A DNA stretch of 64,000 bases from assembly GCA_002269645.1 (NCBI GenBank), contig NIVC01001315.1, positions 198,703-262,702 of the forward strand. Direction: 5' to 3'. Within the stretch, counting starts at the first letter, position 1, and each line of letters opens with the position of its first letter. A program made the position numbers and the translations under genes. This document shows, piece after piece, positions 1 through 45,263 of the stretch. This DNA is from Macrostomum lignano. Its lineage: Eukaryota. The notes beneath the pieces were generated by a model. It did not search any database, was not told the DNA's origin, and was given only the letters and a program-made list of their open reading frames with translations.

Positions 1-860
1 ATGAGCTGCACGAATTCTTCGCCGCCATCGTGAACGCGCTGACACTCCCGCTGCCAGACAATCCGACGCTGTCGGAGACGCCGCCGGATACAGCCCGAGA
101 CACCGTCGCCGGAGGAGGAGAGCTTTAGCATAGTCCCGGTAAGCACAGCCGACGTTTTGAGGCTTGCCCAATTGTCGCCGGGCAGGAAAGCGCTGGGTAC
201 TGACACTAGTTAAGTCGCCAGAGTAATGAACCGGCCGCGTGCTCTTCGGCTAGGATCGGCGCCCAACGAATGGACCACGGAATACATCGCAGCTATTCCT
301 CAGAAGCCGCGCATCACAACCTTGAGGAGTATCAGCTAGGGCATCTGCCTTCGGTCGTGGAGTAGTGGCGCAGATTCTGGCTTTTCGCTGAGGCATCGAA
401 GAGGCGCGGATACGCTAGCAGATCCTGATGTTATCTTGGGGATTCGCAGATACAGATTTACAGATTTGTGGATTATGTATTCGTCGGTGGATAAGTACAC
501 GTGCTGCGCTCCCAATAATGGTGCCAAATCAGCTGGTTTCCGCCATCATGGCGATGTGCTGTGACACGAAACTGCGTGTCAACACCGGACGGCCAATCGA
601 GACCGTTCTGCTTTACAAAGCCGAGGCTTCTGGACGCTGACAGCTGTGGACTCAATCGAATAGCCAGATCAAGCGGCGCACGCTGGCCTGCTACTCGTCG
701 ACTTCAAGATCGGCGACAAACGAGTTCCAACGCGGCACCTGCACTGTATCATCGCACCGGCCCAGAGCGTCCAAGCGACCTGTTGTGCCATCGGCGACTC
801 CAACTGGTTTTATGTTTCTGTCAATGGTCGTTCCTTCTATTAACTTATAACTAATCCTTT
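1..860 (+). pseudogene. Decayed non-LTR (LINE, RTE-like) reverse transcriptase fragment
   Basis: Frameshifted translation gives STADVLRLAQLSPGRKALGTD (cf. EV..AI..LK.GKAPGPD), EWTTEYIAAIPQKP (cf. P.EW....I..IPK) and ETVLLY.AE.WTLT (cf. VLLYG.ETWTL). Multiple stops and shifts; runs off the window start. Confidence 0.6.
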
Positions 861-1327
861 CCACTATCCCCAGCTCCATCAACAGTATTCAGGGCCTCGC
901 GACTATGGCAATTTAAATATAATTTAAACGCAAGAACTGACACAGCATTTTTTTTGATTTAAATTACAGATTTCTGATTTAATTTTCTCAATTTGCTTCA
1001 ATTTCTTATTTATTTCAAGTGCATCGATACCAGAATCAAAGCAAATAATTGGTTAGCTTCAACATGCACGACTGATTAGCAGTTTGCAACAGATGTAATC
1101 ATGCAATAGCGGACACTAGAATTGAAATAAAAGGCGGAAAGATGCTTAGATGAAGGTGCGATCAATATAGAGTTTTCTGTTGTGTTAGGATTATGATTTG
1201 TGTGTGGATAATTGGACTGATTGGCTTACGCACAATAACAAGTGGATTAGAGGAAGCGGAATAAAACTTTGACATGCGAATGTCTTTCACGTTTCAGTCT
1301 TCTGGCTTGAATTCAGTGACCACGATA

Positions 1328-1687
1328 TTAGTGATGATGGTCGTCATGGTGGTGATGACCGTCATGATGATGGTGATGACCGACATGGTGGTGGTGATGG
1401 TCGTCATGTTGATGGAGATGACCGTCATGGTGGTGATGATGGTCGTCATGGTGACCGTCATGTTGGTGGTGATGGTCGTCGTGGTGGTGATGACCATCAT
1501 AGTGGTGGCGATAGCCTTCATGGTGGTGGTGATGACCGTCATGGAGGTGGTGATGGTCGTCATGGTGGTGGCCGTCATTGGCTAGTTCGAAGAGCATCTC
1601 GCCAGTACTGATGGCGTCTGCCTTGGTCAGCAGGGCAGCGGCGCTCATCAGGCCGACTGCCAGAAGTGCGATCAAATACGAGCTCAT
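1328..1687 (-). CDS. Secreted histidine-rich peptide (119 aa, single exon)
   Basis: ATG in gcaATGa context. Hydrophobic signal peptide MSSYLIALLAVGLMSAAALLTKADA with an A-D-A cleavage-like site. The last 82 aa contain 49 His in (D/E)G-Hn-DD-Hn modules. AATAAA on the minus strand at 1009-1014. Confidence 0.75.
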   Translation of the reverse strand: MSSYLIALLAVGLMSAAALLTKADAISTGEMLFELANDGHHHDDHHHLHDGHHHHHEGYRHHYDGHHHHDDHHHQHDGHHDDHHHHHDGHLHQHDDHHHHHVGHHHHHDGHHHHDDHHH

Positions 1688-2649
1688 TGCTGTAGCGGCG
1701 TTTCGGGTGGTCCTATGCCAGTGAAAAACGTGGTGCTCTCGTATCTAGCAGATTCGGAAATTAGCTCAAATGCTGCAGCAGCTCTCACTTAAACTGCTGC
1801 GCTTGAGACTCAGCCCATCGAACCTGTCTCCACAGTCCAGTTTTGTTTGTGTAAAAAAACCCTGGCGTTGATGCCACAAATACGTATATGGCAATGAAAC
1901 GAAATTAACTAGTGGCTTCTTTAAACAGATATTTGTTTTTTTCAATGTATTTTTAAAATTAATAGACTTTAAGAAGCAGCACACCTGAGAACTGCTGATG
2001 TCCCCCATTGCTTAGTTGTATCAGATGTATGTAAATTAGGCATGCAAAACCATTTAACAACAACAACGCATGATTTGCTCATGAATTCGTATGCACTGTG
2101 CCAGTAAGCCAGATGGCCATTTATGCACAGCTGAGTGTGTTTTGCACACGCACCTTACATACATAGAGTGGAGCTATGATGGCTGAATGATGATCATGTT
2201 CTGACTTTATCTTTCACTTAATGACGAGGCAAAATCTAAAATTTACTATATAAACCAGAATAATTGCATGGTTCTACAACAGTACCTGTGTGGGAAAATG
2301 ACAACCATCAATTTAGCACAGCTGTATACAGTGTGTACGTATTTTCAATTCACAAATATGAATTATTTGATAAATAATTATGAAGAATTTTCCCCATTTC
2401 GGCTAGCTACTGTATTCCTTATTTAATTATTTAGAGACAAGACAAGCCTCGAAGAATGAAATATAGCCCAAAAGAATCGGTAACATAGCTTCCGTAGCTT
2501 AGAAACTATAGAAGACAGCAGTGAAACCAGAAATTTTCGTTCAAGAAACAGATAGTTTTGAGCCTGGAAAATGAAACAACAAAATGAAAAGTTTCAAACT
2601 GATTCTCACTGTTCTAGAATCGGGAATAAGCCAATCCTGATAAGATAAC

Positions 2650-3487
2650 TGTGACGTTGTCAGTTTAAGGTGGTCCCGAAAAGGGCCGTTGGACTGCTGT
2701 TTCTTTATAGTTTCAACCCTTCAGTTTCACCGTTTCAACTAAACTTTTCCATTTGTTTATTGCGACGTTTACTTGTAGTAGTGCCCAACGATTTGTGGCA
2801 ATTTCTAATTCACTGTATATTTTGCTATCCTCTCTCGCGACCGTATAAAATTGGCACGATCGATAATTTCAAGTTCTCTCGCCAGCCAATGAAAACCACT
2901 CGTGCTTCGCGCTCCCCCCCTCTGCGCTCCTTTATTAAACCCCCCGCCTGGCGGCGGGCACTCCTCACTCTTCCTCGTCTCCCTGCTCGTCCCTGTTCTT
3001 GTGTTCTGTGTTCTCTCTCCTTAGGCTTGCCTCCGTCCCGTCTGGCTTGCCTAGCCTTGTCTAGCCTTGTTTTCCTTCTCCCTGTCTGGCTGCCTCGAGC
3101 CTCCTTACCTCAAGCCACGGCTGACGCCAACTTCGCCACTGCTCATCCGCCTGCCTACTACGTCTCACTGCCTTCACTGTACTCATTGCCATTGATCATC
3201 ACGTTACGTCGCCATTATATCACTCGTCTGTCGCTTGAACTCGCATCCAATTTACCTTAAAAGAAACCATTGTTGCAGCCGCCAGTGCCCAGAAAGCAAT
3301 AGTTTGTTATTTGCCAGTAACAACCAAACTTACTATTTACATTGATAATAAAAACGACTACGGCAGTTTCCTGCCCTTATTGCCAAGTGCTCCGCTACAC
3401 CATCCACTTCGCCTAAGTTGACTTCAACTTATTTTGGGACTAAAACGGCCCTTTTAAGGGTCACGGCCAACATCAAATAACGTGACA
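2650..3487. mobile_element. Solo LTR (838 bp) of an LTR retrotransposon
   Basis: Starts TGTGACGTT and ends AACGTGACA (TG...CA, imperfect inverted termini including aaaagggccgtt/aacggccctttt). Exact 5-bp TSD ATAAC at 2645-2649 and 3488-3492. TATAAAA at 2844 and AATAAA at 3347. Confidence 0.8.
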
Positions 3488-3492
3488 ATAAC

Positions 3493-3600
3493 AATCAGAA
3501 TCTGCTAGCGTATCCGCGCCTCTTCGATGACTTGGCGAAAAGCCAGGATCTGCACCACTACTCCACGACATTAAGACAGTATAGGCAGATGCGCGCCCTG
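3493..3600 (-). pseudogene. Second fragment of the same LINE, inverted relative to 335-435
   Basis: tctgctagcgtatccgcgcctcttcgatg...gcgaaaagcca.gatctgc.ccactactccacgac matches the reverse complement of about 335-430. Confidence 0.7.
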
Positions 3601-4164
3601 ATAATCGTAGAAAATAAAAACATTTTGGTGGATTGTTTAGTATAGTAGGTAAACGGAGTGGAATAATGGTCAGACACTCGTGCGCTAACGCACAGCGATG
3701 GTTGAATGGATTAATAATTATATAATGGATATAGCTCGTAATTATTTATCCATTAAAGTATAGTTATACACAAAGTATAGAGCGGTCACGTGCTGCGACC
3801 GCTGATTCTTTAGCATTGTTTTTCTGGATTGTTCTGCATAAAATGTGCAAACAACGATCGTCAAATTGCTAAACAATACATTGCAATGCATAAAAATGTG
3901 AATAGCTAGCTAATGATCGTCAAATTGCTCGAAAATGTATGAATAAAATTAAACACTTCATTCTCCAACATTTTTGAAACAATTGTCGATCACCACATTT
4001 AAATTTTTTTAAAATCAAACAAAAATGAAAAACCAAGTCTGCTAATATACTTCTAGGCTTTCCAAAATTATAAGTAAAAGGTTTTAGGGCCTATCTATCT
4101 TTAAAAAATCATTCTTAAAATAAAATTATCAAAAAACGGAATTCAGTCAAATGCTGCTGCAGAT

Positions 4165-4806
4165 GGGGGGGGGGTTTTCACAAACTCGAAATTTCACAAC
4201 GTCGAAAGCACCTTCTTTCACAAGGTCGAAATTCACAAGGTCGAAATTTCATAACATCGAAAACTCAAATAGCAGCCACTTTCACAAGGTCGAAACTTCA
4301 CAAGGTCGAAATTTCACAACATCGAAAACTTTAGCAAAGGACTTCATAAGGTCGAAAATTCACAAGGTCGAAATTTCACAACATCGAAAAGTCGAAAAGC
4401 AGCCACTTTCTACAACGTTTTTCTACAACGTAGAAAACTACTGTATGGTTCTTGATAGATAAAATTTTCGACTTTGTGAAATTTCGAGCTTATGAAGTTT
4501 CGACCTTGTGAAAGTGGCTGCACTTGAGTTTTCGATGTTATGAAATTTCGACCTTGTGAAATTTCGACCTTATGAAATCTCTTGCTAGATTTTTCGATGT
4601 TGTGAAATTTCGACCTTGGGAAGTTTCGACCTTGTGAAAGTGGCTGCTATTTGAGTTTTCGATGTTGTGAAGTTTCGACCTTGTGAAAGTGACTGCTATT
4701 TGAGTTTTCGATGTTGTGAAATTTCGACCTTATGAAATTTCGACCTTATGAAGTCTCTTGCTAAAGTTTTCGATGTTGTGAAATTTCGACCTTGTGAAAG
4801 CACCCC
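4165..4806. mobile_element. Foldback-type non-autonomous element with arms of cacaaggtcgaaattt repeats
   Basis: Left-arm repeats (4180-4440) are inverted in the right arm (4465-4800). Termini gggg...tttcac / gtgaaagcacccc. Flanking direct repeat CTGCAGAT at 4157-4164 and 4807-4814. Confidence 0.7.
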
Positions 4807-6609
4807 CTGCAGATTATGATCTTGGAATTCTTTGAATTCTTGTTAAAGGCATCAGAGGTCAGGACACATATTCTTTCCAATATATTTAATCCCCTTAGCA
4901 TGTCATAATCTCTTAGGCTTAGCCGCGGCATAGGTACCTAATTCTGCAAAAGTTCTCACCAAGTTGGCAAATCGAAACAAAACAAAACTGAGTTGAAACA
5001 TCTATATCTTTTGCACATATCCCAACTACAGGCCTAATGCGATCACACTCATACGTCTTGACAATTATCATATAGTAATAGAATGGCATGGGTGCAGTTG
5101 AATACGTCGTGCTACTTATTAAATAAATATCTGAGAAAACTCGTGGCGAGCTACCAATCTATTTGATCTTTTACTAATCAGTCTTATTAAAGGTAAGCCT
5201 TAGTAGGGTCAAGGTACTCGTACTCTAGGACTAGTGTTCCGCCGTAATTACGGATACGATTACGGAAAACTACGGGGCGGGAACAAAACTGCCGTAATTT
5301 TGGTTACGGATTACGGTTATTGTTGAAAGGGGCAGTTACGGAACGACTATGGGATTACTGCCAGGAGGACGCTTTTCACGAATTTTCCCGTAGCGTAATT
5401 GAAGTTAAATTTTTTCAATACGAATTGTTGCATTTCTTCTTGCAAAAAGTATAAAGTATAATATTTAAAAAATTAAATCTCTAATTTTTTGCCTGTCGTG
5501 TTTGAAATGAAATACAAGTTACCATGGTAGTTTGTTTAAATCGAGAAATAATGTTCGCATTTTAATAAAGTGACTTTGGGCCTTCCAATTTAAAATGTAC
5601 TAGATTGAACGCGATTCGTGAGACGTGAACGGGTGGTAAACCTGACATGATTTATTGGATTGGGGATTAGCTATTTGATTTTTATAAACTTTAAATGTCA
5701 ACTTTTTTGCTCTGTAGTTGGAGTTTTCAATTTTATACCCTCTTTTTGTCTCGTTTTTGAGAAACAAGCACTCTATGATGTGATATGTGTTTATGTTGCA
5801 TATTGAAAATTAAATTGCCAGTTTTGAAGATCTCGACAATCTATGGGAAGGTAGTTTTTACATGTGGTACGTGTTACAAATCTACATGTTTTTTTACATC
5901 GTTTTCCTTACTATGTCTATTCCTAATTTTTGTTATATTACGGCTACAGTTGTCAGTTACAGGAAACTAGGTGATTATAGAGAAGTGGGCACCAAAATGG
6001 CAGTAAAATATGGGTACAGTTAGGCCATAGTTCGGAAGAGGGCATGTACGCCGGAAATTTCCGGGGTACAGTCAAGAAATTTGGCGTACATGTTGGCGTA
6101 CAAATAGTAATTTTCTAAGGCTTTTGGCGTACATGTTTAACCATGATTACTAATTTGGTGTGTAACATGCACCAAAAAATAAAAAATTCGTAACCTAGTG
6201 AAATCAATAACAGTTACAAAGTCGTTCATTATGCATTTACTGTAAAATTTCACGATTGATGCAGAACTGACTTCCGTGTTTTTTGCTTGTGGTGAAGTTG
6301 TAATTTTAACAAAAAATGCACAAATTTTACTTAAATTTTATAAATAAACTGTTGTACATATAAATCTGTCACTTTTTAATAGTTCTTGCTGATAAATAAA
6401 AAAGTTACTTTCCGTTTTCAACATTGACAATTTAAAATTAAATATCGATATCACTAGTCCAGCTAGGTAATGTTTTTATCGGGCCGTTTTGGGCTGAGAC
6501 ATTTGATATTCCTGATAGATACAACTCCGGACATTCATTTAGGTTGTATCGGACTCAAATGCGCGAGTCATCCCAACCTTCGCGGCCCAGCGCGGTTCCT
6601 TGGATGCCC

Positions 6610-8760
6610 GTCAAAACGGCCACACGCGGAACGGCCACACGACAAAACGGCCACACCGTTAAAACGGCCACACGACAAAACGGCCACATAAAACAAAAAG
6701 GGTTGCAGATCGACTGCTCATGAGATCCAGCTCATGACATCAAAATGCAAAAGAAGTGAATGCATTGAGATATTGTGAAATTTATGTAGGCCGAAAAGGA
6801 TCCGAAAGGAAGCACCAGAGAAGCGAAGACGAAATTGTATTTTATGGAGCGACCAGCAGTTATGCAAATTTTTAAAAGATGCTAAAATAGTTATGTAAGA
6901 AAGTTAAAAAATGCTAAAATGGTTCACAAAGTATCACAAAGTAAAATTTACCACAAAAGTTAAAAAGTTAGGAGCTTGAATGTCACTCGAAGCTGCACTA
7001 AAAAATTCCCGTTGCAATCATCTCCAGCAGCTGCATGCTCTCAGCAGTGATCTCCTGCGCCTGAAATCGGCTCCATGCCTGGATCACACAGGCGTGCGTT
7101 CGTTGGCAGCTTTTCTTCTGTCGGCGGTACAACTTGCCGTGACTAAGTAGCTTTCGCTGAGCTGGCACGACTTTGACCTCCTCGATCGATCTGCAAGCAG
7201 CTGCAGTAGCTGGTACAGAGGGTACTGGCCATGCCGGCGTCCTCTTGTATTAATCCTCTGGTGCCAGCCTTCAACGTCGTTGTTAGTTCGGATGGCGAGT
7301 GCAAAGGTTCACCACGTGGACGGTGGAAATGTGGCTGTTGCCGTGATCCAATTGCGCTCTACGTACTCGAGCCACTCTCCCAAAGGCCCATTCAGGTGAG
7401 CAGGTGAGCAGGCAGATCGCAGCTGTTCGAAGTTTGGCAGAATATCATTTGATGGCAGGTAAGCCAGGGCCATCACCTTTCTGCAGAATCTGCGCAGTGA
7501 GTAGGACACTGCGTAGCTGCGTGCAAGGCCAAGCTGCTGCAGATGGCGATACAGTGCTTGGCAACTCGAAGTCGATGGTCTTTGGTTCTTTTGGTCGATC
7601 TTTTTGTCTGGCTCGCTGCACCATCCGAACCAGAGCAGCTTGGCTCCGAGACCCGTCGACTCCAGCAGGGTCTGATGCCTGCCTGTAAAATGGTAAATTT
7701 TGATTGATTGACTGACTGATTGATTGATTGATTGATTGACTGATCGATTGATTGATTTACCTAGCTTCAACAATTTCCGCAGCTGGATGGAATAGCTGCC
7801 GCTTGCCATCTGCCTTCAAATCGCGCCACAATGCCACCTGCTCAGCTGTGACGCCAGGTGCGAAGTGGTTGTGCTCGGCGCGATTATTGGTGAAAGTGCC
7901 ACCACTCTCAATAACACTTGCTGAGCAGTTCCTGATGCTGCACCTCCAGTACCTCTTCTTCGCTCGTCGGAATTTTTTAACGAAAGTGAATCCAAGATTG
8001 GAAATCAGAGTGGCCTTGCCCTTCTGTGATCCTTCTTCTACTACAACAAAAGCCTCTTCCTCTTCTTCCAGTACTGTTGAAAGCTCCAGCTCAATTGTTG
8101 GTTCGTCAATGCCAACATCCAATTCCGTGCTATGCAACGGAAACAAGCTGTCTACAAGTGTCTCAGAGTCAGCCTCGAGGCCTGAAATGTAGAGAATTGG
8201 AATGTAGAAAAAAATCTGCTTTAGCTCAACTTCACATGCATCGACTTACCTAAACCTTCTGTAACAACTTCAGGTGCGTCAGATGCTGGTAACCTTATTC
8301 GCAAACGTAAGGCAGGTCGCTCCTCAGCAGCTAAGCTGGGTTCCGCTGCCGCACTGTGCTCAGCAGCTAAGCTGGGTTCCGCTGCGGCACTGTGCTCAGC
8401 AGCTGAGCTGGGTGCTAGCAGGCAATTTGGACAAAACCATGGCATCGTCTCATTCTTCATGGCATTGTAGCAGCAGATTTACAATAATTACCAATTACAG
8501 TTAATTCAAATAATTACAACTATAACAGCATACTATAAATAGCAACTCACCTTTCAGACAAAGTCGATGCAGTGCCATCTGCTGCAGCGATCGCAGCACA
8601 ATGCATGCTGGCGGGGTCTGACTCTAAGTAGACACTTTGGACAACTGTCGTCCATTGTTAAAAATGAAAAATGAAAAAAAAAATTATTACATCGTGTGGC
8701 CGTTTTGTCGTGTGGCCGTTTTGTCGTGTGGCCGTTCCGCGTGTGGCCGTGTGGCCGTGT
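6610..8760 (-). mobile_element. Mutator-like (MULE) transposon, inner element
   Basis: Repeat-built inverted termini acggccacacgcggaacggccacacgacaaaacggccacac at 6610-6690 and its reverse complement at 8690-8760, enclosing the transposase pseudogene. No TSD found. Confidence 0.7.
7000..8655 (-). pseudogene. Degenerate PHD-FLYWCH-MULE transposase
   Basis: PHD halves MDDSCPKC...ALCCDRCSRW.HRLC and YNAMKNETMPWFCPNC. FLYWCH finger SQKGKATLISNLGFTF...YWRCSIRNCSA...HNH (7757-8146 ORF). MULE C-terminal motifs DFE, ALAYLP...EYVERNW...FPPSTW and RTNNDVEGWHQRIN (about 7250-7290). Frameshifts present; first catalytic Asp and CxFH not found. Confidence 0.8.
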
Positions 8761-9039
8761 AAATGTAATATATTTACATAGAAGACAAATTTAATAACTG
8801 CACTGTAAACGACAACGTCACAAAGATACATGGCGTACATCGGCGTACACAAAAAAAATTGGTAGTTTTTTTTTTCCGGGGTACATACAGAGTGTTCCGA
8901 ACTATGGCAGTTAGGCAACTTAATTTGTTGTATGGCCAATACCCGCAAAGCACATTGCTGTGCTTGTGTTGCTTGCACTTGCAAGTTGCTAATTATATGT
9001 TACTGGAAAATATTTGGTAGGTAATGACAAATTGACAAC

Positions 9040-9230
9040 CAGGGACAGATCCAGAAAGGGAGGGCCAAGGGGTAGGGGGGCCATGGCCATCATGGCTCCT
9101 CTCAGCTGCAGCCAAAAAAAATTTGGTCATTTTTTGGCCTGCTACTATGCCAGGTCTATTTTCAAATATAGGGTTATAGTGCTTGGTATAGCTTAGCCCC
9201 TTCCTCAAAAATTTTCTGGATCTGCACCTG
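9040..9230. mobile_element. hAT-like MITE (191 bp)
   Basis: TIRs cagggacagatccagaaa / ttttctggatctgcacctg. Degenerate 8-bp TSD ttgacaac / atgacaat. Confidence 0.65.
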
Positions 9231-9786
9231 ATGACAATAGGTTGGTTGTAATTTTGTATTGGTGTGTGAATGCCTTAAAAACTTTTCGCACTACACTCAT
9301 TAATACTGTTCTCCCTCTATAGGCTAGACAATCTATCAGAGCTAAAAATCCCTTATGATAATGAATTTTTTTCAAAAAAATGTTTATTTCTGGCACAAAT
9401 TTTCCTGAGTATTGCAGTACACTAGACTAATGTCAGGGTTCTGGATTGTAGAATAGTGTATACTGGAGCAAAAATCTTATTCTAAAGTTATAATCTAGAA
9501 AATAATCAAATAACTAAACTAAAGTTTTCAGTGATAAAAATTTTTTTAAATAATTTTTTTATATAATGTTGTTGATTTAATTGTATAATTTTTTATCATT
9601 GACTCTTTATTTAATACTAAATTTGTCTTAAGTTTGCATAAAAATGTCAATATTAATATTTATATTATTCATATTAGTGTATTACATAATAATACATTTT
9701 ATTAGTATTAAAATTTATATGCAATGCATTCCAAAATTTATATATTTTTTCTATGGCAAAACTTATAGGCCTCTGCTACCTATATT

Positions 9787-11067
9787 AGGGACTTCAGTGA
9801 GTTATAAGAAGTGCGTGCCAATGGCAAAAAAGTAAGAAAAAAGTCCAATTTTTCAAGGGCGATTTTAAAGAAACTATAGAAGCCAGGATGAAAGTAAAAT
9901 ATGCATTTAAAAGGTAAAAAGGAGCTCTTTCAAATGACACCAACTGCAAGTCTAGCTTTGTTATACTTTTTGCACTGTCTATTTTTAAAGTTGACCATTT
10001 TTTAGGAGGAATATAAAATTGAAGCCAAAATGAATAAAAAAACAGTGGTTCAGAAAATGCTTTTTCTTAGCTGCAATGTGTTTCTTATAATGGAAACAAA
10101 GGTTTTATAGTGTAAAGGGATAATTTAGAAACATTTTTCTGGTGTTAAAAAAAATTTTTTTTTTCTTTTAATGCCCATATGGCTCTATGCAAAATTTCAA
10201 ATCCAAAATTTTCCATGAAATCCTTTTCCTGCATTGTTTCTCTTTATATTTTTCATTACCTATTGACAATACAAGCACAGTAAAAAAAACCGCTTGCCAA
10301 TAGCTATAGGCGCAAAAATTTTGTGGAGGTTTCTTTTTTTGATACGTTTACATGTAAAATACCCATTGAAACGTGTATTTCGTGTTTTTTGTGAGACTCT
10401 GCCTTCCGGCAAACTAGTTCTCTGTGTCATTTAACTAATTCTGCTATGCTGAACACGATAGGCAAAACCGTTTTTTAATAAACCCATGCGCAAAGCCTGT
10501 ACAGCACATTACATTGCAGTTGGGGTGTCTGTCATGCATTAAAAATTTAGGGCAAGAAGTAGAATAGTATTATAGTAGGTAAAAACCTGAACAAAATGAC
10601 ACTAGCCTTGTATAAATTAAGCAAGCAGAACAGATGCTATTGTATTTTTAAAATTGCAATCATTGCGTATCTGGTTAAAATAGTCAAAATTTCATACACC
10701 CATCCTGTTTCAATTAGCTTAGCAACTTGGGCATATAAAATAATATTAAAATATATAATTCATACAATTAACACTAAAAAACTGAACAAAATGACACCAA
10801 GCACAGTCATTTTGGTTGGCTAGAAAATTAATTACAAGTGTTCAAAGACAAAAAGCCAACTTTTTGGCCAAAAATGATCACAAACCGTAATGTAAAAATT
10901 CCATTGGCTAAAGGCACAAATCGGGGTTACTAAAATAGCTGTAGTTTCCTTATTACTCAACCAAATCACTAAAGTTTGGCCATTTTGGAAATGGGAAAGT
11001 AAGATCTATCTAGTGAAATAGCAGCCTATAACAATTTCTGAAATTTAATTTTCTCACTGAAGTGCCT
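9787..11067. mobile_element. AT-rich non-autonomous TIR element (MULE-like by TSD length)
   Basis: 15-bp TIRs agggacttcagtgag / ctcactgaagtgcct (1 mismatch). 9-bp TSD acctatatt (9778-9786) / acctatata (11068-11076). No coding capacity. Confidence 0.65.
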
Positions 11068-12537
11068 ACCTATATATCATAAAAATGGCAAAATATATAT
11101 GCCAACTTTAAAAGAGTTCATTAATGAATTTTTTATTTACATTTAACCTTCTAGAGCCTAGGAACTTTGCAGAGCATAAAACCTAAATTGCATGCCTAGC
11201 ACAATAAATTGCCTAGGATAAGCAAAGTGATAGCCATCTATGAATGCAGTATAAGCATTAGTAATGAGTGCTAGTAAACTTGTCAACTTTTTTGTCAACT
11301 GGCCTAGCTGTATAGTAAATTTGTCAATTGGTAAATTCATCAACTAGTAAATTCCTCAATACAGTACAGTATATACAGCTATCTCAGTGCACAGATAAAA
11401 CAGATTAATAAAAACAATGAGCTGAGATGTGTCATTATAATGCTGGTTTTTAGGCACAGGACATGACAATTGTCAATTGTGACAATGCCTGCCTTTACTG
11501 TTGCCAGATTGGCATTGTCAATTGCTGGGTCTTTGCTAGATTGACTGGATAAGAGACAGTAGCGCACTGCAGCACCTAGCAGTCTGCCATGTATATCATA
11601 ATCAAATATGAGATATAATAAAATAAAAAACAATGAAACCAAGAATCTTCCATTTCAATAACTAGCTAGGGGACTGCCATTAATTGTTCTAGGATCCCAA
11701 TCCTAATCAATTTTAATAAATGTAATTTAAAAAAAAGTATTATTTAATCAACTTTTTATCCACTATTTATCCAATTACACACTATACAAACTCTGGTAAA
11801 CTTGTCAACACAGTTGACAAATAAAAAGTTGATAAGTTTACCCAGATAAGGTAAAATTCCAAAGAACCTAGTATAATAGTGCAGGCCTATAAAAAATTCA
11901 AAGAAAAGCACACATATTTGATAGTGCAAATATACAGAAGCATTAAATCATTGATTAAAATGATATATGAATAAAATTGTCTATATATTGTTAGAAAGGG
12001 GTCATAGTAAAAAAGCAAATAGAAATGTTTGCAAAAAGTTTTTCTTGCAAATAAAATAACACCAATGCTATTATTATCTAAAAATTATAGAAACCTGAAT
12101 TAACATTCCTTATAGACATTGCAATTTTTTAATTATTGCTAAGTCATTAAAAAACGTTATTCTATATGTTATTTTATATTCTTATTAAACTGTGATACTT
12201 TCTAAGTATCTTTAAAGCATATCTATAAAAATCTTATTTCTTTATTCATCTTTAGCTAGGCCTATTTTTTATACTTTTATTTATATTGTTTTTAGTTATT
12301 ATAGTTGAAGCTTACATTAAAAAAGATAAGTTGAGATTTTTAGTCCGTTTGTTTTTTATTGGCAATTTTAATTTTATTGTTTTTCCTATTTTTTAATTGC
12401 TATGCGAAATATTCTAGGCTTTAGTATGTATTATGAATATATAAAAATGCTATAATATGGACTTTTTAATTTTGGTTCAAATTACTGTCAAAATCAAATC
12501 TTTGCTTATAATCCCACTTATTGATCTTCATTCATGT

Positions 12538-12718
12538 AGGGAATTAATTCCCCAGACAGTCGCAATTGCTAACCAGCTGCAGCAGGAATTAATTCCCCGG
12601 ACACTCGCAATCACTAACCAGCTGCAGCAGGGAATTAATTCCCCAGACACTCGCACTCGCTAACCAGCTGCAGCAGGGAATTAATTCCCCAGACACTCGC
12701 AATCGCTAACCAGCTGCA
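12538..12718. repeat. About 46-bp minisatellite, 4 copies, abutting the RPA43 ATG
   Basis: Unit gcagggaattaattccccagacactcgcaatcgctaaccagctgca; the last copy runs directly into the ATG at 12719. Confidence 0.9.
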
Positions 12719-13375
12719 ATGCCGCCATCTCCCGCTAAGCCAAAGCGCAAGCGGCGCCGCTCAGCTGCCTCCACAACCGAGGAGGCTGACTGGCCCAGCA
12801 GCCTGGCAACTGAGATGGAGAAGCCGCCGGCAGCTGCGCCAGCTGACGTAGAAGAAAAAGACGAAGGCGGCGAATGCTTTGAGCGGGTTCGCCGGGAGCT
12901 GACGATCCCGCTGCATCCCTGGCAGCTGGGCGGCGACGCCGGCGCCCTGGTGGCCGAGCAGCTCCGCTGCCGCCTGCACCGCCACGTGCCCAGCCTGGGC
13001 GGCATCCTGCACAGCGTAGACTCGCTGCGCCTCCTGGCCAGCGCTGATGCCGGCCGGCGCCGTCTGGCCGCCCCGCTGGTGGCCTGCGGCCCCAGCCTGG
13101 TGCAGTGCCCGGTGCGCCTCCGCCTGCACTGCCGCCTGTTCCGGCCGCGGCCCGGCCTCAGCCTGGCCTGCACAGTCACCGCCGTGCTGCCCGAGCTGCT
13201 GTCCTGCGTCTGCCACGGCGTCTACCAGGTCACCGTGGCCGTGCCGCCCGCCACCCCGACGCTGGCGCCAGGCGATCGAGTGTTGGCCAGGGTGGTCCGG
13301 GTTCGAACCCACAGCCGGCTGCAGGTCAGCGTGGAGGCGGAGTTCGTGGCCATCCTGCCGGACCGGGTGGACTGA
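12719..13375 (+). CDS. POLR1F: RNA polymerase I subunit RPA43 (218 aa, single exon)
   Basis: LTIPLHP...EQLRCRLHRHVPSLGGIL and LFRPRPGLSLACTVTAV...LSCVCHGVYQVTV resemble the RPA43/Rpb7-like N-domain and OB fold (IFCPEPGQKLMGIVNKV...IGCLVHGCFNASI). GC-rich codon bias; AATAAA about 50 bp after the stop. Confidence 0.75.
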   Translation: MPPSPAKPKRKRRRSAASTTEEADWPSSLATEMEKPPAAAPADVEEKDEGGECFERVRRELTIPLHPWQLGGDAGALVAEQLRCRLHRHVPSLGGILHSVDSLRLLASADAGRRRLAAPLVACGPSLVQCPVRLRLHCRLFRPRPGLSLACTVTAVLPELLSCVCHGVYQVTVAVPPATPTLAPGDRVLARVVRVRTHSRLQVSVEAEFVAILPDRVD

Positions 13376-14535: not shown

Positions 14536-14667
14536 CCTGCTGAAAATGGTGCTAACACGGGAGTTTTATCAGTCTGCTTTAGCCGGCAGCCCTGCAGATA
14601 TTCCCTTTCTGTTATCCATTGTTCCTGCAATCCTCTGGCATTCCCTAGCAACAAAAGTTCATCCAGC

Positions 14668-17478
14668 ATGAATTGGCGGTGCCCGAATCCGCTGCTGCTG
14701 CTGCTGTCGCTGCTGCTTTTTCATCGCCTCGACGGCACTCTGGCGGCTCAGCGCGATAGGCCGCTGATCTTCCAGCTTGGCAGCCAGCCAATCACCATCA
14801 GGCGCGATTCGGTCTCGCTGGCTGGCGATTGGACACAGCGGCTCTGCGTGTTCTGCTCGCCCGGCCTGCCCGCCCACCCGCGCTTCGCCTTCCACGGCGC
14901 CTCGATGCGCATCTCGCTGGCGTCGTCCAATTCGGCGGCGCCGCGCCTCTTCCTCGGGACGAACGAGAGCGATGTTACTGACCGGGTGCGGCAGGCCTCG
15001 GAGGCCTCGCTGTTCCACCGGCTGCTCCTGCCGGCCGCCTTCCGTGACGGATTTTTCTGGGAGCCGCTGATGGCCGCTCGGCGGGCTTTTCTCGGCCCGC
15101 TGGCGCTGCCGCTGCCGCTGCTGGAGCCGTCCTGCGCCGGCGTGCTGATCGAAGGCAAGGAGGAGCCGCCGAGGGCCATCGGTGCGTCCGCAGCAGGGCC
15201 TGCCGCCCATGGTGCTGGGGATCTTGGCTGCAGGGATGAACCTGGGAAATTGGTCCCCAATCTAGGTATATTGATCCCCAATCTAGGGATACTGATCCCC
15301 AATCTAGGAATATTGATCCCTAATCTAGGAATATTGATCCCCAATCTAGGGATATTGATTCCAATCTAGGGATATTGATCCCCAATCTAGAGATATTGAT
15401 CCCCAATCTAGGAATATTGATACCCAATCAAGGGATTTTGATCCCCAATCTAGGGATACTGGTCCCCAATCTAGGGATATTGATCCCCAATCTAGGGATA
15501 TTGATCCCCAATCCTTGGATATTGATCCCCAATCTAGGGATATTGATCCCCAATCTAGAGATACTGATCCCTAATCTAGGGATATTGATCCCCAATCTAG
15601 GGATTTCGATCTATACGACTATAAACAATAGATATGAATCACTAATCTTAGGATTATCGATACCAAATATATGGATTTTTCGCCTGAACTACCCGTAGAG
15701 ATGTTACTCGTATTCCCTATTCGGGAATACTAATCCCAGTCAGGGGATATTCCTCAATCTCCCCAACCCGGCACCGCAGCAGAAGGCGACGCCGCCGTCT
15801 ACACTGTGCGCGCCGTCGCCGGCCTCAGCCTCGCCCGCCTTGCCGCATTCGTCATCGGCTGCGGCCTGCTGGCCTGGGCGCCCGAACTCAGCCGCCGGGC
15901 CACCTTCCACTACGCTGGCGGCGCCATGGCCGGCGTCCTGCTGTCTGCGGCGCTCCTGGTGCTGCTGCTCAACCGCCTGCTGCCGCTGCGCCGCCTCTTT
16001 TGGCCGCTCTTCCTGGCCAGCGCTGCCGGCGCCGGCGCCATCTGGACTTTCGCCGCCGCGCACGCCGCCGAACTCGCTGAGCGGCACTGGACGACTCTGT
16101 CTGCCTACCTGGCCTGCTCTGCCGGCCTCTCCGTGGTCATCTGCTACTGGCTGGGGCCCGTCACCAGCCAGCGGACTTTCCGCCTGCTGGAGATCGCGCT
16201 GAGGGCCCTGGCGCTCCTCTGCATGCTGGCCTCCTGTCAGGTATGACCTCTGTCCGATTCCCACTACTGATCCCCTTCCACCTGCCTGATCCCATTCCAC
16301 CTGTCTGATCCCCTTCCACCTGCCTGATCCCCTTCCACCTGCCTGATCCCCTTCCACCTGCCTGATCCCCTTCCACCTGCCTGATCCCTTCCACCTGCCT
16401 GATCCCCTTCCACCTGCCTGATCCCCTTCCACCTGCTCGATTTCCGTTCTGACGCTTATCAGCTCCCCTACGCCCTCAGTTCTGGCAGGTATCAGGGGTG
16501 GCAGCGGTGGCAATCCTGCTGCGCGGCTTCTTGACATCCGCCGTGTCGGCCGTCGCGAAGGTCTCGATGTTACGCCTGCGCTGGGCGCTGTGGCAGCGCC
16601 TGGAGTCGGCCTTCTGGCGCTGCTGCCCCCGCTGGTTGCGACCGCTGCACCGGCGGCGCTGGCTGACCGAGGAAGACTTCAGCAGGCAGGGCCGCGAGTG
16701 CACTGAGGTGGCGCTGGAGCATCTGCGGCGGCACTGCGCCAGCCCCGACTGCGACGCCTGGCGGGTCAGCGCGCGCCTGCGGGACCCGGCCGGGTTCGCC
16801 CAGTTTGTGCAGGTGAGTGCTGTCACTGCTGTGCCAATGAGGCCTGTGCACCTCCTCACACATGGATACGGCAGGCAAGCAGTCACTTGAGTATAAATAT
16901 GAAATCAATACTCGCAGAAAAGCTGTGGGCACCGCGGAGCTACGGTGAGACCGATCTGCGCATTCCGCTGACTCCTGAGCACATACAGGCACATTCCGCT
17001 GACTCCTGAGCACATACAGGCACATTCCGCTGACTCCTGAGCACATACAGGCACGCCAATACTGTACAGAGGCACGCACTCATACACACGACAGCCCCAC
17101 ATAAATATAGCTGCGCACGGAATTGAACCAGGGGCCGTTGCGCAAGAGTCTGACGCAGTTACCGCTGCGGATGCTCTGCCAAGTATTGCGGAGCTCACAG
17201 CTCAAACACCCGGCGCACTTCAGGGCGGCAGCCACCTGCAGTCGCTGCTGGACTCCACGGACCTGTCTTCGGACAGCGACAGTTCGACCGTGGCCCCCGC
17301 CGCCACCACCTCTTCGCCGGCTCCCAACGGATGGAAGGCCACGCCCGGTTCGACGCGCGCCCCCGCAGTGAACGGCAACGGATGTGCGCGAGGCGCCCGC
17401 ATGGCGCCGTCCGCGACTCAGATTCGGCAGAGGCGGCCAGTTCTGGACGAGTCGGACGACGGCTCCCTCACTGACTGA
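14668..17478 (+). CDS. NEMP1: Nuclear envelope integral membrane protein NEMP1/TMEM194 (about 517 aa)
   Basis: Exons 14668-15181, 15780-16240, 16489-16812 and 17224-17478, GT-AG and frame-continuous. Signal peptide; TM region with FHYAGG..AGVLLS and GPVTSQRT; hallmark RRWLTEEDFSRQG...ALEHLRRHCASPDCDAWRVSARLRDPAGFAQFVQGGSHL. In-frame alternative acceptors at 15783/15786 and 16480. Confidence 0.9.
15250..15605. repeat. 21-bp minisatellite, NEMP1 intron 1
   Basis: Unit gatccccaatctagggatatt, about 17 copies. Confidence 0.95.
16265..16437. repeat. 19-bp minisatellite, NEMP1 intron 2
   Basis: Unit gatccccttccacctgcct, about 9 copies. Confidence 0.95.
16960..17052. repeat. 31-bp repeat x3, NEMP1 intron 3
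   Basis: Unit gcacattccgctgactcctgagcacatacag. Confidence 0.9.
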
Positions 17479-37073: not shown

Positions 37074-37310
37074 GGCCAGTCTGTGTGGTGTGAGAGGTCT
37101 CTGGATCTGCTCCGCGGCCTCTGGCTCGGGCGAACGCAGCTAATATTTCTGCGCTGATTAGATACTGTAAGTTTGTTTTTAGTAACCAAGGCAACTAGAA
37201 TTTTAACTTTTATTGATAAGGCCTTAGTAGACATATTGGTCTTCGCTCAGAGGCGCATTTGGTTTCACAAAAATTAATTTTGGAAACGCCACTCAATACC
37301 AGCAATTTCG

Positions 37311-44573: not shown

Positions 44574-45263
44574 ATGGCTCCGTTGGAGTTCCTCCCGCTA
44601 CTCCTGACCATCCTCCTCTGCGCCCGCGCTGCCGCCGGTTCCAGCGACCGGAGCTCCTTTGACGACGCGTCCGCCTGCGCCCAGCGACCGCCTCCGCGCC
44701 GCAGCCTGACGGAGCGCGTGGGAGGGAAAGTCGTGCGCCAGGAGGTCGAGTTGCGACAGACGGCGGTGCACGGCTGCGTGTGGGCGCTGCCGGGGGGCAA
44801 CCGCACCGACTACACCTTGGCGGGCCGCTGCCTGCGCGTCAGCGCCACCATCAGCGTCAGCGAGGAGGACGGCGCCGGCGGCTTTTGGAGGTCGCGCGCA
44901 GTGGCGCCGGCCGACGCCGAGCCGGCGGACCCGCGCCTGACCGGCAAGTGCCGCCTCCGCCGCTCCGTGGACTGCCGTCTGCACCCGGTGGCCTTCTGGG
45001 ACCCGCGGCTGCCCTGCGACGAGGCGGCGGCCCTCCGCTGCGCGCAGCTGCCGCGGCTTCACTGGCGCCTGCTGGCGGGCCGCAACGTCAGCCAGACGCT
45101 GATCAGCCTGGTGACTTCGGGGCTGCGCGCCAGAGACGGTGCCGCCTGCGAGTGGGCGCTGCTGGGCGGCTGGGCCGGCGACTTCACTCGCTGGTGGGCA
45201 GCGCCGAGCAGCCGTGCGCGCGGTGCCGCGGCGGCGGCGGCGGCGGCATCGCTGACTGCGTAG
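44574..45263 (+). CDS. Orphan secreted Cys-containing protein (229 aa ORF; true C-terminus uncertain)
   Basis: aagATGg start, signal peptide MAPLEFLPLLLTILLCARAAA, gene-like GC3 bias, several Cys and two N-glycosylation sequons (NRT, NVS). No family recognised. Confidence 0.55.
   Translation: MAPLEFLPLLLTILLCARAAAGSSDRSSFDDASACAQRPPPRRSLTERVGGKVVRQEVELRQTAVHGCVWALPGGNRTDYTLAGRCLRVSATISVSEEDGAGGFWRSRAVAPADAEPADPRLTGKCRLRRSVDCRLHPVAFWDPRLPCDEAAALRCAQLPRLHWRLLAGRNVSQTLISLVTSGLRARDGAACEWALLGGWAGDFTRWWAAPSSRARGAAAAAAAASLTA

What the first reader, a model, noticed from the sequence alone, without database searches (positions are those of the whole stretch)
1328..1687. Secreted peptide with 49 His in 82 residues: candidate metal-binding or structural biomaterial protein
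Seen: signal peptide, a short acidic spacer, then DG-Hn-DD-Hn modules made almost only of H, D and G, with no Cys. Established: His-rich secreted proteins bind Zn, Cu, Ni or heme and harden or coacervate (Nereis jaw Nvjp-1, squid-beak HBPs, mussel byssal His domains, Plasmodium HRP2, Helicobacter Hpn). Inference: a lineage-specific, pH/metal-switchable secretion (adhesive, mucus/rhabdite, stylet, eggshell or metal detoxification). The paired Asp/His pattern is unusual.
Basis: partly seen in the sequence, partly recalled or inferred. Interest (0 to 1): 0.7.

Follow-up and report, generated by a model that had tools for sequence, protein, structure and literature searches.

The report
Flatworm secreted histidine-rich repeat protein
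A small gene of the flatworm Macrostomum lignano, unannotated at this copy and apparently read in the wrong frame at its duplicate in GenBank, most likely encodes a secreted, disordered protein that is half histidine: a probable metal-binding, pH-switching secretion whose role in the animal is unknown.

Summary
Window 1328-1687 (-) is a 119-aa ORF with a signal-peptide-like N-terminus, a 12-aa spacer and an 82-aa tail of 49 His, 16 Asp and 8 Gly with no Cys, built from 13 alternating DG-Hn/DD-Hn modules.

The window is the last 64 kb of Macrostomum lignano contig NIVC01001315.1 (Mlig_3_7). A duplicated locus, NIVC01001659.1, carries an intact 121-aa copy that is 94% identical and differs by three in-frame indels. 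GenBank's transcript-derived annotation calls a same-strand gene there, but in the overlapping Thr/Met/Ile frame. Generic codon scoring favours that frame, so I read it as a mis-framing.

The His frame is supported by four things:
- It starts at the first AUG.
- It has a signal peptide.
- Its 38 unique N-terminal codons match the codon-position GC profile of neighbouring genes.
- Differences between internal repeats are biased to third positions.

No relative turned up in HMMER, Pfam or PDB searches.

Best reading: a lineage-specific, secreted, disordered His/Asp protein. It should chelate Zn/Ni/Cu, and its calculated charge flips from about +27 at pH 5.5 to about -17 at pH 8. Tissue and physiological role are untested. 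It is a new member of a known kind, of moderate interest.

The parts
1328..1687 (-). Complete single-exon CDS in the His frame: 119 aa plus TAA. Equals NIVC01001315.1:200030-200389.
   Evidence: ORF list and residue counts. The mapping of window to contig comes from a 100% match of L002 to window 2719-23375. Neither this protein nor the two other ORFs over the array are on record at this copy.
1613..1687 (-). Predicted cleavable signal peptide, residues 1-25 (MSSYLIALLAVGLMSAAALLTKADA | ISTG).
   Evidence: My rule-based filter for a hydrophobic core plus small residues at -3 and -1 passed 7 of 119 ATG-ORFs in the window. Three of the other six are known secreted or membrane proteins: two esterases and NEMP exon 1. 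AlphaFold2 models a helix over residues 2-37. SignalP was not available.
1577..1612 (-). Non-repetitive spacer, residues 26-37 (ISTGEMLFELAN).
   Evidence: Identical in the L004 copy. Together with the signal peptide, GC at codon positions 1/2/3 is 0.58/0.42/0.71, against 0.57/0.41/0.69 in the esterase genes. Codon log-odds is +14.3 bits in this frame and 1.3 or less in the other five.
1331..1576 (-). His/Asp/Gly tail, residues 38-119: 13 modules of [D/E/V][G/D]-H(2-5), alternating DG and DD. Holds 49 His.
   Evidence: AlphaFold2 gives no secondary structure and pLDDT of about 50.
1342..1571 (.). Underlying diverged tandem DNA array with periods of 21, 42 and 114 nt.
   Evidence: Tandem Repeats Finder reports 70-82% matches. 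The two 114-nt half-repeats are 80.5% identical and differ at codon positions 1/2/3 by 5/7/12 bases.
1294..1578 (-). Overlapping alternative-frame ORF (94 aa, Thr/Met/Ile-rich). Its counterpart in the duplicate locus (L004 2346-2639) is the frame the annotation calls. Judged not to be the real product.
   Evidence: Generic codon log-odds is +47 bits for this frame against -10.5 for the His frame, which would explain the annotation pipeline's choice. The silent C/T changes of the His frame become Thr/Ile changes at codon position 2 in this frame.
1009..1014 (-). Candidate poly(A) signal AATAAA, 314 nt after the stop codon.
   Evidence: Pattern scan only. The 3' flank as far as aligned (window 1150-1327) is identical in L004.
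1713..1728 (-). Pyrimidine tract plus AG (TTTTTCACTGGCATAG), ending 26 nt before the ATG. A possible cis- or SL trans-splice acceptor.
   Evidence: Pattern scan only. 38.8% of M. lignano genes are trans-spliced (PMC5730564). Inference.

Best explanation
This is a real, lineage-restricted, single-exon gene of Macrostomum lignano, present in at least two duplicated genomic copies.

Translation starts at the first AUG. The 25-residue signal peptide takes the product into the secretory pathway. After cleavage, a protein of about 94 aa and 11.5 kDa is released, and it is intrinsically disordered.

The mature chain is 52% His and 17% Asp. Its 13 alternating DG-Hn and DD-Hn modules put runs of imidazoles next to carboxylates. 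It should therefore bind many borderline divalent metal ions per chain (Zn2+, Ni2+, Cu2+, Co2+). Scaling from Hpn (own knowledge), the number would be of the order of ten.

Its net charge should titrate steeply around pH 6-7. It would be polycationic in an acidic secretory granule and polyanionic in seawater.

Shown here: the ORF and its anatomy, the organism, the second in-frame copy, a same-strand gene call at that copy, and the coding-type composition of the unique N-terminus.

Inferred: secretion, disorder, metal binding and the charge switch.

Unknown: the cell type and the physiological role. That role could be metal buffering or sequestration outside the cell, or a metal- or pH-controlled component of a glandular secretion.
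For: - ORF and composition.
- Organism and exact position: window = NIVC01001315.1:198703-262702 of GCA_002269645.1.
- Second copy: L004 2380-2745 (-), 121 aa and 94% identical. The three indels of 3, 12 and 21 nt all keep the frame, and the start and stop are kept. Among 75 non-coding indels between the same two loci, only 21% are multiples of 3.
- Transcription: a gene is called on the same strand over the L004 array. The other calls in these loci are GenBank BOX15 models, and that annotation derives from RNA-seq transcript assemblies plus TransDecoder (PMC5730564).
- Frame:
  - The unique 38 N-terminal codons have GC1/2/3 of 0.58/0.42/0.71, matching the esterase genes (0.57/0.41/0.69). They sit inside flanks of 35-38% GC. 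Codon log-odds is +14.3 bits, against 1.3 or less in the other five frames.
  - Within 320 nt upstream, the only ATG is a 2-codon uORF at -131. Position -3 is G here, against C for the alternative-frame ATG.
  - Differences between the internal half-repeats fall 5/7/12 on codon positions 1/2/3, with pN 0.14 and pS 0.52.
  - 78 of 81 third positions in the tail are pyrimidines, which is exactly the His/Asp codon boundary.
- Signal peptide: 7 of 119 control ORFs pass my filter. Three of the other six are known secreted or membrane proteins.
- Disorder: AlphaFold2 gives coil at pLDDT of about 50 after residue 37.
- Charge: about +27 at pH 5.5 and about -17 at pH 8.0, with a calculated pI of 6.7.
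Against: - I saw no RNA-seq reads and no peptides. Transcription is inferred from a gene call at the 97%-identical duplicate, and that call uses a different frame.
- The tool did not show the locus tag of the 97-aa call. That it is a GenBank BOX15 model is my inference from the other calls in the same loci.
- At this copy none of the three ORFs over the array is on record as a gene product. No protein with this N-terminus was found in the collection, which holds UniRef and NCBI M. lignano proteins.
- Flanks are as conserved as the CDS between the two copies, so that comparison shows no selection. The four clean substitutions inside the array are all non-synonymous in the His frame: L/H, Y/H, H/Y and H/Q. 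Two of them are silent in the alternative frame.
- The statistics are weak. The third-position excess has p = 0.068. The synonymous/non-synonymous Fisher p of 0.0009 is not corrected for transition bias.
- In-frame indels are mechanically favoured in an array with 3-nt periodicity.
- The signal-peptide call rests on my own simple rules.
- Generic codon scoring disfavours the His frame overall, at -10.5 bits.
Confidence: 0.6

Rival explanations
1. The locus is a non-coding or untranslated minisatellite. It would be one more of the many tandem arrays of this genome, possibly transcribed as part of a non-coding RNA or UTR, and its open His frame with an upstream ATG would be fortuitous.
For: - The window holds dozens of minisatellites that produce long spurious ORFs.
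- Three of the six frames are open over this array.
- No gene product is on record at this copy, and no relatives were found anywhere.
- The flanks are conserved as well as the ORF is.
Against: - The ORF extends 114 nt beyond the array into unique sequence. That sequence has the codon-position GC profile of local genes and forms a 57% GC island within flanks of 35-38% GC.
- It starts at the first AUG with a signal-peptide pattern.
- A 3-nt indel inside that unique part keeps the frame in the second copy.
- The array is far more diverged (70-82%) than typical arrays of the window (mostly 85-99%), yet it is still open.
- A protein-coding gene model was derived from transcripts at the duplicate.
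Confidence: 0.17
2. The annotated frame is the true one. The locus would encode the 94-97 aa Thr/Met/Ile-rich protein (MTATTMTTITT...) and the His frame would be untranslated.
For: - The gene called at L004 2346-2639 (-) is this frame.
- Generic codon log-odds is +47 to +51 bits, against -10.5 for the His frame.
- Two of the four array substitutions between the copies are silent in this frame.
Against: - The opposite-strand Val/Met frame scores almost as high (+45 bits). The score therefore reflects composition rather than coding.
- This ORF starts at a downstream ATG with C at -3, after three earlier AUGs in the His frame.
- It has no unique N-terminal part.
- The commonest class of repeat differences, C/T at His-frame position 3, falls on its codon position 2 and swaps Thr for Ile at random.
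- It is the shorter of the two overlapping ORFs.
Confidence: 0.05
3. The His-frame protein is real and secreted, but metal chelation is incidental. Two main jobs are possible.

(a) A pH-triggered charge-reversal peptide. It would pack or neutralise polyanionic cargo in acidic granules, then turn polyanionic in seawater and drive decondensation or de-adhesion.

(b) A nucleophile-rich substrate that is cross-linked by quinones in a tanned structure such as the eggshell.
For: - The calculated charge swings from about +27 at pH 5.5 to about -17 at pH 8.
- For M. lignano detachment, a small negatively charged secreted releasing factor has been proposed and was not identified in that paper (PMC6410801).
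- Flatworm eggshells are quinone-tanned and metal-containing (PMC2758302).
- His-catechol cross-links in insect cuticle and squid beak are established chemistry (own knowledge).
Against: - No expression data place the gene in adhesive organs, rhabdite glands or oocytes.
- With only 2 Tyr and no Lys in the mature chain, it cannot itself supply DOPA.
- Any protein with 49 His will bind metals, so the two readings are not exclusive.
Confidence: 0.18

Closest known systems
Plasmodium falciparum histidine-rich protein 2 (HRP2/HRP3)
   Same: Both have an N-terminal signal sequence followed by a tail made almost wholly of short tandem His-plus-Asp repeats. Both are exported. HRP2 binds Zn2+ and haem. 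Its array changes by gain and loss of repeat units, as seen here between the two copies. The HRP2 properties are from my own knowledge.
   Different: HRP2 repeats are Ala-rich (AHHAHHAAD type), with about 34% His. Here His is 60% of the tail, there is almost no Ala, and the frame is DG/DD. No sequence relationship was detectable. The organisms and biology are unrelated.
Helicobacter pylori Hpn and Hpn-like nickel-storage proteins
   Same: Both are very small proteins with extreme His content (Hpn about 47%) and are largely disordered. Hpn binds several Ni2+ per chain (own knowledge).
   Different: Hpn is bacterial and cytoplasmic, has no signal peptide, contains Cys pairs and Gln, and has no DG/DD module periodicity. 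Here there is no Cys and there is a signal peptide.
Vertebrate histidine-rich calcium-binding protein (HRC, Pfam PF10529 repeat)
   Same: HRC also has a signal peptide, lies in the lumen of the secretory pathway, and carries tandem repeats that combine His runs with acidic runs. It binds cations with high capacity (own knowledge).
   Different: HRC is large, and its repeats have long Glu/Asp stretches and HRHRGH motifs. Pfam-A returned no HRC repeat family even at E up to 10.
His/Gly-rich structural proteins of marine invertebrates (Nereis Nvjp-1, Glycera jaw protein, squid-beak HBPs, mussel His-rich domains)
   Same: These are secreted His-rich proteins of marine invertebrates. They are metal- or pH-triggered, through Zn or Cu hardening or coacervation (own knowledge; PMC13022425 for Zn and His in mussel glue).
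   Different: They are Gly-dominated, with 25-35% His, and carry Tyr/aromatic or coiled-coil parts that drive assembly. Here Gly is 10%, there are 2 Tyr, the mature chain is 94 aa and the charge is strongly acidic at seawater pH. That makes a load-bearing material role less likely.
His-rich secreted peptides of blood-feeding arthropods and metal-chelating antimicrobials (tick microplusin/hebraein, salivary His-rich peptides, histatins)
   Same: These are short, secreted, His-rich peptides proposed to act by sequestering Zn or Cu (own knowledge).
   Different: They are much less His-dense. Several are folded and Cys-stabilised, or cationic. They have no Asp-paired modular repeat.
His/Asp-rich loops of zinc transport proteins (bacterial ZnuA loop, ZIP/CDF His-rich loops)
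   Same: The local chemistry is the same: alternating His and Asp/Glu stretches that capture Zn2+ (own knowledge).
   Different: Those are loops of 10-30 residues inside folded proteins, not free-standing secreted polypeptides.

Membership tests
Secreted His-rich, intrinsically disordered metal-binding proteins (a functional class, not a homology family) | N-terminal signal peptide | tested here: met
   Uncharged 16-residue hydrophobic core followed by A-D-A | I. My rule-based filter passes 7 of 119 control ORFs, and three of the other six are known secreted or membrane proteins. The feature is kept in the L004 copy with a one-codon deletion. No SignalP was available, so this is a heuristic result.
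Secreted His-rich, intrinsically disordered metal-binding proteins (a functional class, not a homology family) | His content of about 25% or more in a low-complexity, repeat-built region | tested here: met
   49 His in 82 residues (60%), or 52% of the mature chain, in 13 modules.
Secreted His-rich, intrinsically disordered metal-binding proteins (a functional class, not a homology family) | Lack of a stable fold | tested here: met
   Single-sequence AlphaFold2 gives no secondary structure after residue 37, with pLDDT of about 50. This is a prediction only.
Secreted His-rich, intrinsically disordered metal-binding proteins (a functional class, not a homology family) | Demonstrated binding of Zn/Ni/Cu or haem | not testable with these tools
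   Needs ITC, IMAC or ICP-MS on recombinant or native protein.
Secreted His-rich, intrinsically disordered metal-binding proteins (a functional class, not a homology family) | The gene is expressed and translated in the His frame | tested here: inconclusive
   A same-strand gene is called at the 97%-identical duplicate, but with the CDS in another frame. The intrinsic coding signal favours the His frame. I inspected no reads or peptides.
Histidine-rich Ca-binding protein repeat (Pfam PF10529) and any other Pfam family | Match to the family profile at its gathering threshold | tested here: not met
   No Pfam-A family at E of 0.01 or less. At E up to 10 the only hit is a meaningless PFF1_TM match at 12 bits against a cut-off of 32.3.
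Homologues of HRP2, Hpn or any protein with a solved structure | Detectable sequence similarity | tested here: not met
   phmmer and word-seeded searches of 5.8 billion and 1.84 billion proteins gave 0 hits. PDB chains gave 0 hits at E up to 10. HMMER's composition correction probably suppresses purely compositional matches, so this shows no homology rather than no similar composition.
Gly/His-rich coacervating or metal-hardened biomaterial proteins (Nvjp-1, squid-beak HBP type) | Gly-dominated repeats with aromatic residues (GHGxY-type) in a long chain | tested here: not met
   Gly is 9.6% and there are 2 Tyr in a mature chain of 94 aa. The defining motif is taken from my own knowledge.

The most novel reading that the evidence does not exclude
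The protein could be a charge-reversing secretory peptide. It would be stored as a polycation in acidic gland vesicles and become a polyanion of about -17 on contact with seawater at pH 8. In that state it could compete with anionic partners for cationic Lys/Arg-rich partners such as Mlig-ap1. That would make it a candidate for the unidentified small negatively charged releasing factor proposed for duo-gland temporary adhesion in M. lignano (PMC6410801). More generally, it could be a pH-triggered decondensation trigger for rhabdite or mucus granules. Nothing here places the transcript in releasing glands. Only the calculated charge curve and the predicted secretion fit.
Probability: 0.04. Interest if true: 0.8.

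Novelty: new member of a known kind. Interest (0 to 1): 0.4.

Why it matters
If the gene is expressed as read here, M. lignano makes one of the most His-dense secreted proteins I know of: 60% His over 82 residues, against about 47% in Hpn and 34% in HRP2 (own knowledge). The animal allows RNAi, in situ hybridisation and stable transgenesis (PMC5730564). The in-vivo role of an extreme His/Asp secretion could therefore be tested directly, which is hard for the jaw, beak and byssus proteins that inspired the biomaterials work.

There is also a practical annotation lesson. Likelihood-based ORF callers score His-rich frames negatively and prefer an overlapping frame. Here the generic score is -10.5 bits for the His frame against +47 for the other. 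At the duplicate locus the annotation appears to carry the wrong frame, and at this locus no gene product is on record. Extreme-composition secreted proteins may be hidden in this way in transcriptome-derived annotations more generally.

Tried and rejected
**Homology searches, all empty**
- The full protein against 5.8 billion clustered proteins gave nothing. The 8000 word-sharing candidates all failed scoring.
- The N-terminal 40 aa alone found no candidate sharing three 5-mers.
- phmmer against 1.84 billion representatives gave 0 hits.
- Pfam gave nothing usable and PDB sequences gave nothing.
- Exact look-ups of the His-frame, alternative-frame and plus-strand products failed.

**Literature**
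- No paper in the library links Macrostomum to a His-rich protein.
- No paper prints motifs such as HHHDDHHH or DGHHHDDHHH.
- Searches for metal-exposure transcriptomics in M. lignano and for a flatworm His-rich eggshell protein gave nothing usable.

**Transposon cargo: rejected**
The 82-nt inverted repeat at 354-434 / 3488-3569 brackets the gene. It is just two fragments of a degenerate non-LTR reverse-transcriptase element in opposite orientation. The similarity does not extend further, and both duplicate loci, as far as each reaches, share the layout.

**A gene family in the neighbourhood: rejected**
No other His-rich ORF lies at the esterase-side homeologous locus L001. No other copy of the signal-peptide/spacer region occurs in the window or in L001-L004.

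**The third genomic copy: not reached**
On NIVC01000151.1 the fetched locus L003 stops about 280 nt short of where the gene should lie. I did not try to get round that.

**Other**
- The bacterial promoter/terminator scan does not apply to a eukaryote and showed nothing above shuffles.
- I did not run fold search, because a model at pLDDT 60 would give meaningless matches.
Full report
**1. What is in the sequence**

Window 1328-1687, minus strand, is an ATG-to-TAA ORF of 119 aa:

MSSYLIALLAVGLMSAAALLTKADAISTGEMLFELANDGHHHDDHHHLHDGHHHHHEGYRHHYDGHHHHDDHHHQHDGHHDDHHHHHDGHLHQHDDHHHHHVGHHHHHDGHHHHDDHHH

The last 82 residues contain 49 His, 16 Asp and 8 Gly, and the whole protein has no Cys. The tail splits into 13 modules that alternate between DG-Hn and DD-Hn, with one EG and one VG variant.

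His codons are 25 CAT and 24 CAC, and Asp is 16 GAC to 1 GAT. Tandem Repeats Finder sees a diverged array at 1342-1571 with periods of 21, 42 and 114 nt and 70-82% matches. It is not a simple trinucleotide repeat.

**2. Why an open frame alone means nothing here**

The 64-kb window is packed with minisatellites of period 13-56 nt. These generate 63 ORFs of 150 aa or more, mostly obvious repeat read-throughs. Over the His array itself three of the six frames are open. Besides the His frame there is a Thr/Met/Ile frame on the same strand (1294-1578) and a Val/Met frame on the other strand (1274-1585). The real question is therefore whether the His frame is a gene.

**3. Organism and exact location**

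Two head-to-head carboxylesterase ORFs at 35-39 kb match Macrostomum lignano proteins at up to 100% identity. The 218-aa ORF at 12719-13375 is an annotated gene on GenBank contig NIVC01001315.1 of assembly GCA_002269645.1 (Mlig_3_7). The fetched locus is 100% identical to window 2719-23375.

The window is therefore NIVC01001315.1:198703-262702, the end of the contig. The His ORF is at 200030-200389 on the complement strand.

**4. A second copy**

M. lignano is a recent polyploid with much duplicated sequence. PMC5730564 reports 180 Mb in blocks at least 95% identical.

The 90% cluster of the neighbouring 218-aa gene led to two duplicate loci. These are L003 (NIVC01000151.1) and L004 (NIVC01001659.1:3230-23886).

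- L004 aligns to window 1-2649 at 95.5%.
- It carries an intact His-frame ORF at 2380-2745 (-), 121 aa long.
- The two proteins are 94% identical.
- They differ by one codon deleted in the signal peptide (YLIALL against YFALL), a 4-codon HHDD indel, a 7-codon module indel, and the substitutions L/H, Y/H, H/Y and H/Q.
- All three indels keep the frame, and the start and stop are kept.

For comparison, only 16 of 75 indels in the non-coding alignment of the same two loci are multiples of three. Two of the three ORF indels lie in an array with 3-nt periodicity, where in-frame changes are mechanically favoured. Only the 3-nt indel in the unique signal-peptide sequence is an independent observation.

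The flanks are as conserved as the ORF, so this young duplication gives no dN/dS signal. L003 ends about 280 nt short of the expected third copy.

**5. Transcript evidence, and an apparent mis-annotation**

In L004 a gene of 97 residues is called at 2346-2639 (-). That is exactly the Thr/Met/Ile frame over the array. The other genes called in these loci are GenBank BOX15 models, so I take this one to be a GenBank model too. The tool did not show its locus tag.

According to the genome paper, that annotation was built from RNA-seq-derived StringTie/TACO transcripts, with coding potential estimated by TransDecoder. [quoted passage not shown] A CDS there implies that a same-strand transcript model exists at the duplicate. 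The repeat-overlap filter is one possible reason why no product is on record at the window's own copy, but I cannot check that.

I tested why the other frame would be chosen, using a codon table from three genes of this window. The His frame scores -10.5 bits overall: +15 for the unique N-terminus and -25.5 for the array, because His codons are rare in ordinary genes. The Thr/Met/Ile frame scores +47 to +51. The opposite-strand Val/Met frame scores +45. Two incompatible frames both score high, so the score reflects composition and not coding. A likelihood-based ORF caller would nevertheless pick the Thr/Met/Ile frame.

**6. Evidence that the His frame is the translated one**

(a) It is the only frame that runs from the array into unique sequence. 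Those 38 codons have GC at positions 1/2/3 of 0.58/0.42/0.71, almost identical to the esterase genes at 0.57/0.41/0.69. They form a 57% GC island between flanks of 35% and 38%. Their codon log-odds is +14.3 bits, against 1.3 or less in the five other frames.

(b) The ATG is the first AUG. Within 320 nt upstream there is only a two-codon uORF at -131. Position -3 is G. The alternative-frame ATG lies 106 nt further down, after two more in-frame His-frame AUGs, and has C at -3.

(c) The N-terminus has the pattern of a cleavable signal peptide. A crude filter of my own passes 7 of 119 ATG-ORFs of the window. The other six include the two esterases and the first exon of the annotated NEMP gene, so the filter mostly picks real secretory-pathway proteins.

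(d) The two 114-nt half-repeats differ at 5, 7 and 12 sites of codon positions 1, 2 and 3, with pN 0.14 against pS 0.52. The position-3 excess has p = 0.068. The synonymous/non-synonymous contrast has p = 0.0009 before any correction for transition bias, and the neutral ts/tv between the duplicates is only 1.29. In the alternative frame these same C/T changes fall on codon position 2 and swap Thr and Ile.

(e) 78 of the 81 third positions in the tail are pyrimidines, the exact boundary of the His and Asp codon pairs. The only exceptions are two CAA (Gln) and one GAA (Glu).

None of these is decisive alone. Together I put the probability of a real His-frame gene near 0.75.

**7. What the product should be like**

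Cleavage after Ala25 would leave 94 residues of 11.5 kDa, with 52% His, 17% Asp and 10% Gly, one Arg and no Lys or Cys. Single-sequence AlphaFold2 gives a helix over residues 2-37 and an unstructured tail at pLDDT of about 50.

A Henderson-Hasselbalch estimate with His pKa 6.5 gives the net charge:

| pH | Net charge |
|---|---|
| 5.5 | about +27 |
| 6.5 | about +6 |
| 7.0 | about -6 |
| 8.0 | about -17 |

Runs of 3-5 His flanked by Asp are classical ligand sets for Zn2+, Ni2+, Cu2+ and Co2+. This is established coordination chemistry, seen for example in Hpn, HRP2 and the ZnuA loops (own knowledge).

The mechanism I commit to is a secreted, disordered, multivalent chelator of divalent metals whose charge state flips between granule pH and seawater pH. 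Which physiological process uses this is not addressed by any result here.

**8. Comparison with known things**

No homologue exists in any library I could search. HMMER's composition correction probably suppresses purely compositional matches, so this says there is no homology. It does not say that no similar composition exists.

By architecture, the closest is P. falciparum HRP2: a signal sequence plus a His/Asp tandem-repeat tail with variable unit number. By density, it is H. pylori Hpn. By cellular compartment and His/acid alternation, it is vertebrate HRC, whose Pfam repeat family was not returned.

They are Gly- and aromatic-rich and much longer, and this peptide does not meet those features.

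It belongs to a known functional kind, the secreted His-rich disordered proteins, as a new and compositionally extreme lineage-restricted member.

**9. The most novel reading not excluded**

For M. lignano's duo-gland adhesion, a small negatively charged secreted releasing factor was proposed that would disengage the Lys/Arg-rich cohesive protein Mlig-ap1. That paper did not identify the factor (PMC6410801). A secreted peptide of about 94 aa carrying about -17 at seawater pH, but cationic while stored, has the right charge logic.

This is speculation without any expression evidence, and I give it about 4%.

**10. Verdict**

Gene status is likely and secretion is plausible. Metal and pH chemistry is inferred, and the biological role is open.
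- Novelty: a new member of a known kind.
- Interest is moderate (0.4). It is raised somewhat by the experimental tractability of the host animal and by the annotation artefact it exposes.

No step needed referral.

Noticed in passing
L004 2346-2639 (-) = NIVC01001659.1:5575-5868; window equivalent 1294-1578 (-): The CDS called at the duplicate locus is the Thr/Met/Ile frame that overlaps the His array. Generic codon scoring prefers it (+47 to +51 bits against -10.5), which suggests a systematic mis-framing of extreme-composition genes by likelihood-based ORF callers.
   Followed up: yes
window 35011-39346: Two carboxylesterase (PF00135) genes lie head to head with nearly identical signal peptides (MESTLTT... 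and MASTLTT...) and a 237-nt spacer. This looks like a recent inverted duplication. The same pair exists in the duplicate contig NIVC01000151.1 at 94% identity over 12.3 kb.
   Followed up: partly
window about 6025-8908: A stretch of about 2.9 kb is absent from both duplicate loci. It holds a FLYWCH zinc-finger ORF (7757-8146, PF04500, E = 2e-7) between 48-nt inverted repeats at 6609-6656 and 8710-8757. It is probably a terminal-inverted-repeat transposon insertion private to this copy.
   Followed up: partly
window 2650-3487: An 838-nt C-rich segment is present only in this copy. In L003 and L004, window position 2649 joins directly to 3488. It looks like an insertion about 1 kb upstream of the His gene.
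   Followed up: no
window 1-434 and 3488-3569: There is a degenerate fragment resembling non-LTR reverse transcriptase, judged by my reading of the translation. An 82-nt piece of it is repeated in inverted orientation on the other side of the His gene at 91% identity. It is not a transposon carrying the gene.
   Followed up: partly
window 12000-64000: Minisatellites are extremely dense: periods of 13-56 nt, arrays up to 2 kb, many 90-99% identical. They include arrays between exon-like ORFs of real genes. One is an Exo_endo_phos2 / inositol-phosphatase-like gene at about 22.7-25 kb (-). Another is NEMP at 14629-17478 (+). Read-through of these arrays creates long spurious ORFs.
   Followed up: partly
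window 44574-45263 (+): A 229-aa ORF has a good signal-peptide-like start (MAPLEFLPLLLTILLCARAAAGS...) and no Pfam match. It may be the first exon of an unannotated secreted protein.
   Followed up: no
window 1-12700 against L004: Outside the His ORF, the duplicated loci differ by 4.2%, with ts/tv of 1.29 and mostly 1-2-nt indels. The 2.6 kb around the His gene is closer (95.5%, and about 97-99% next to the ORF).
   Followed up: partly
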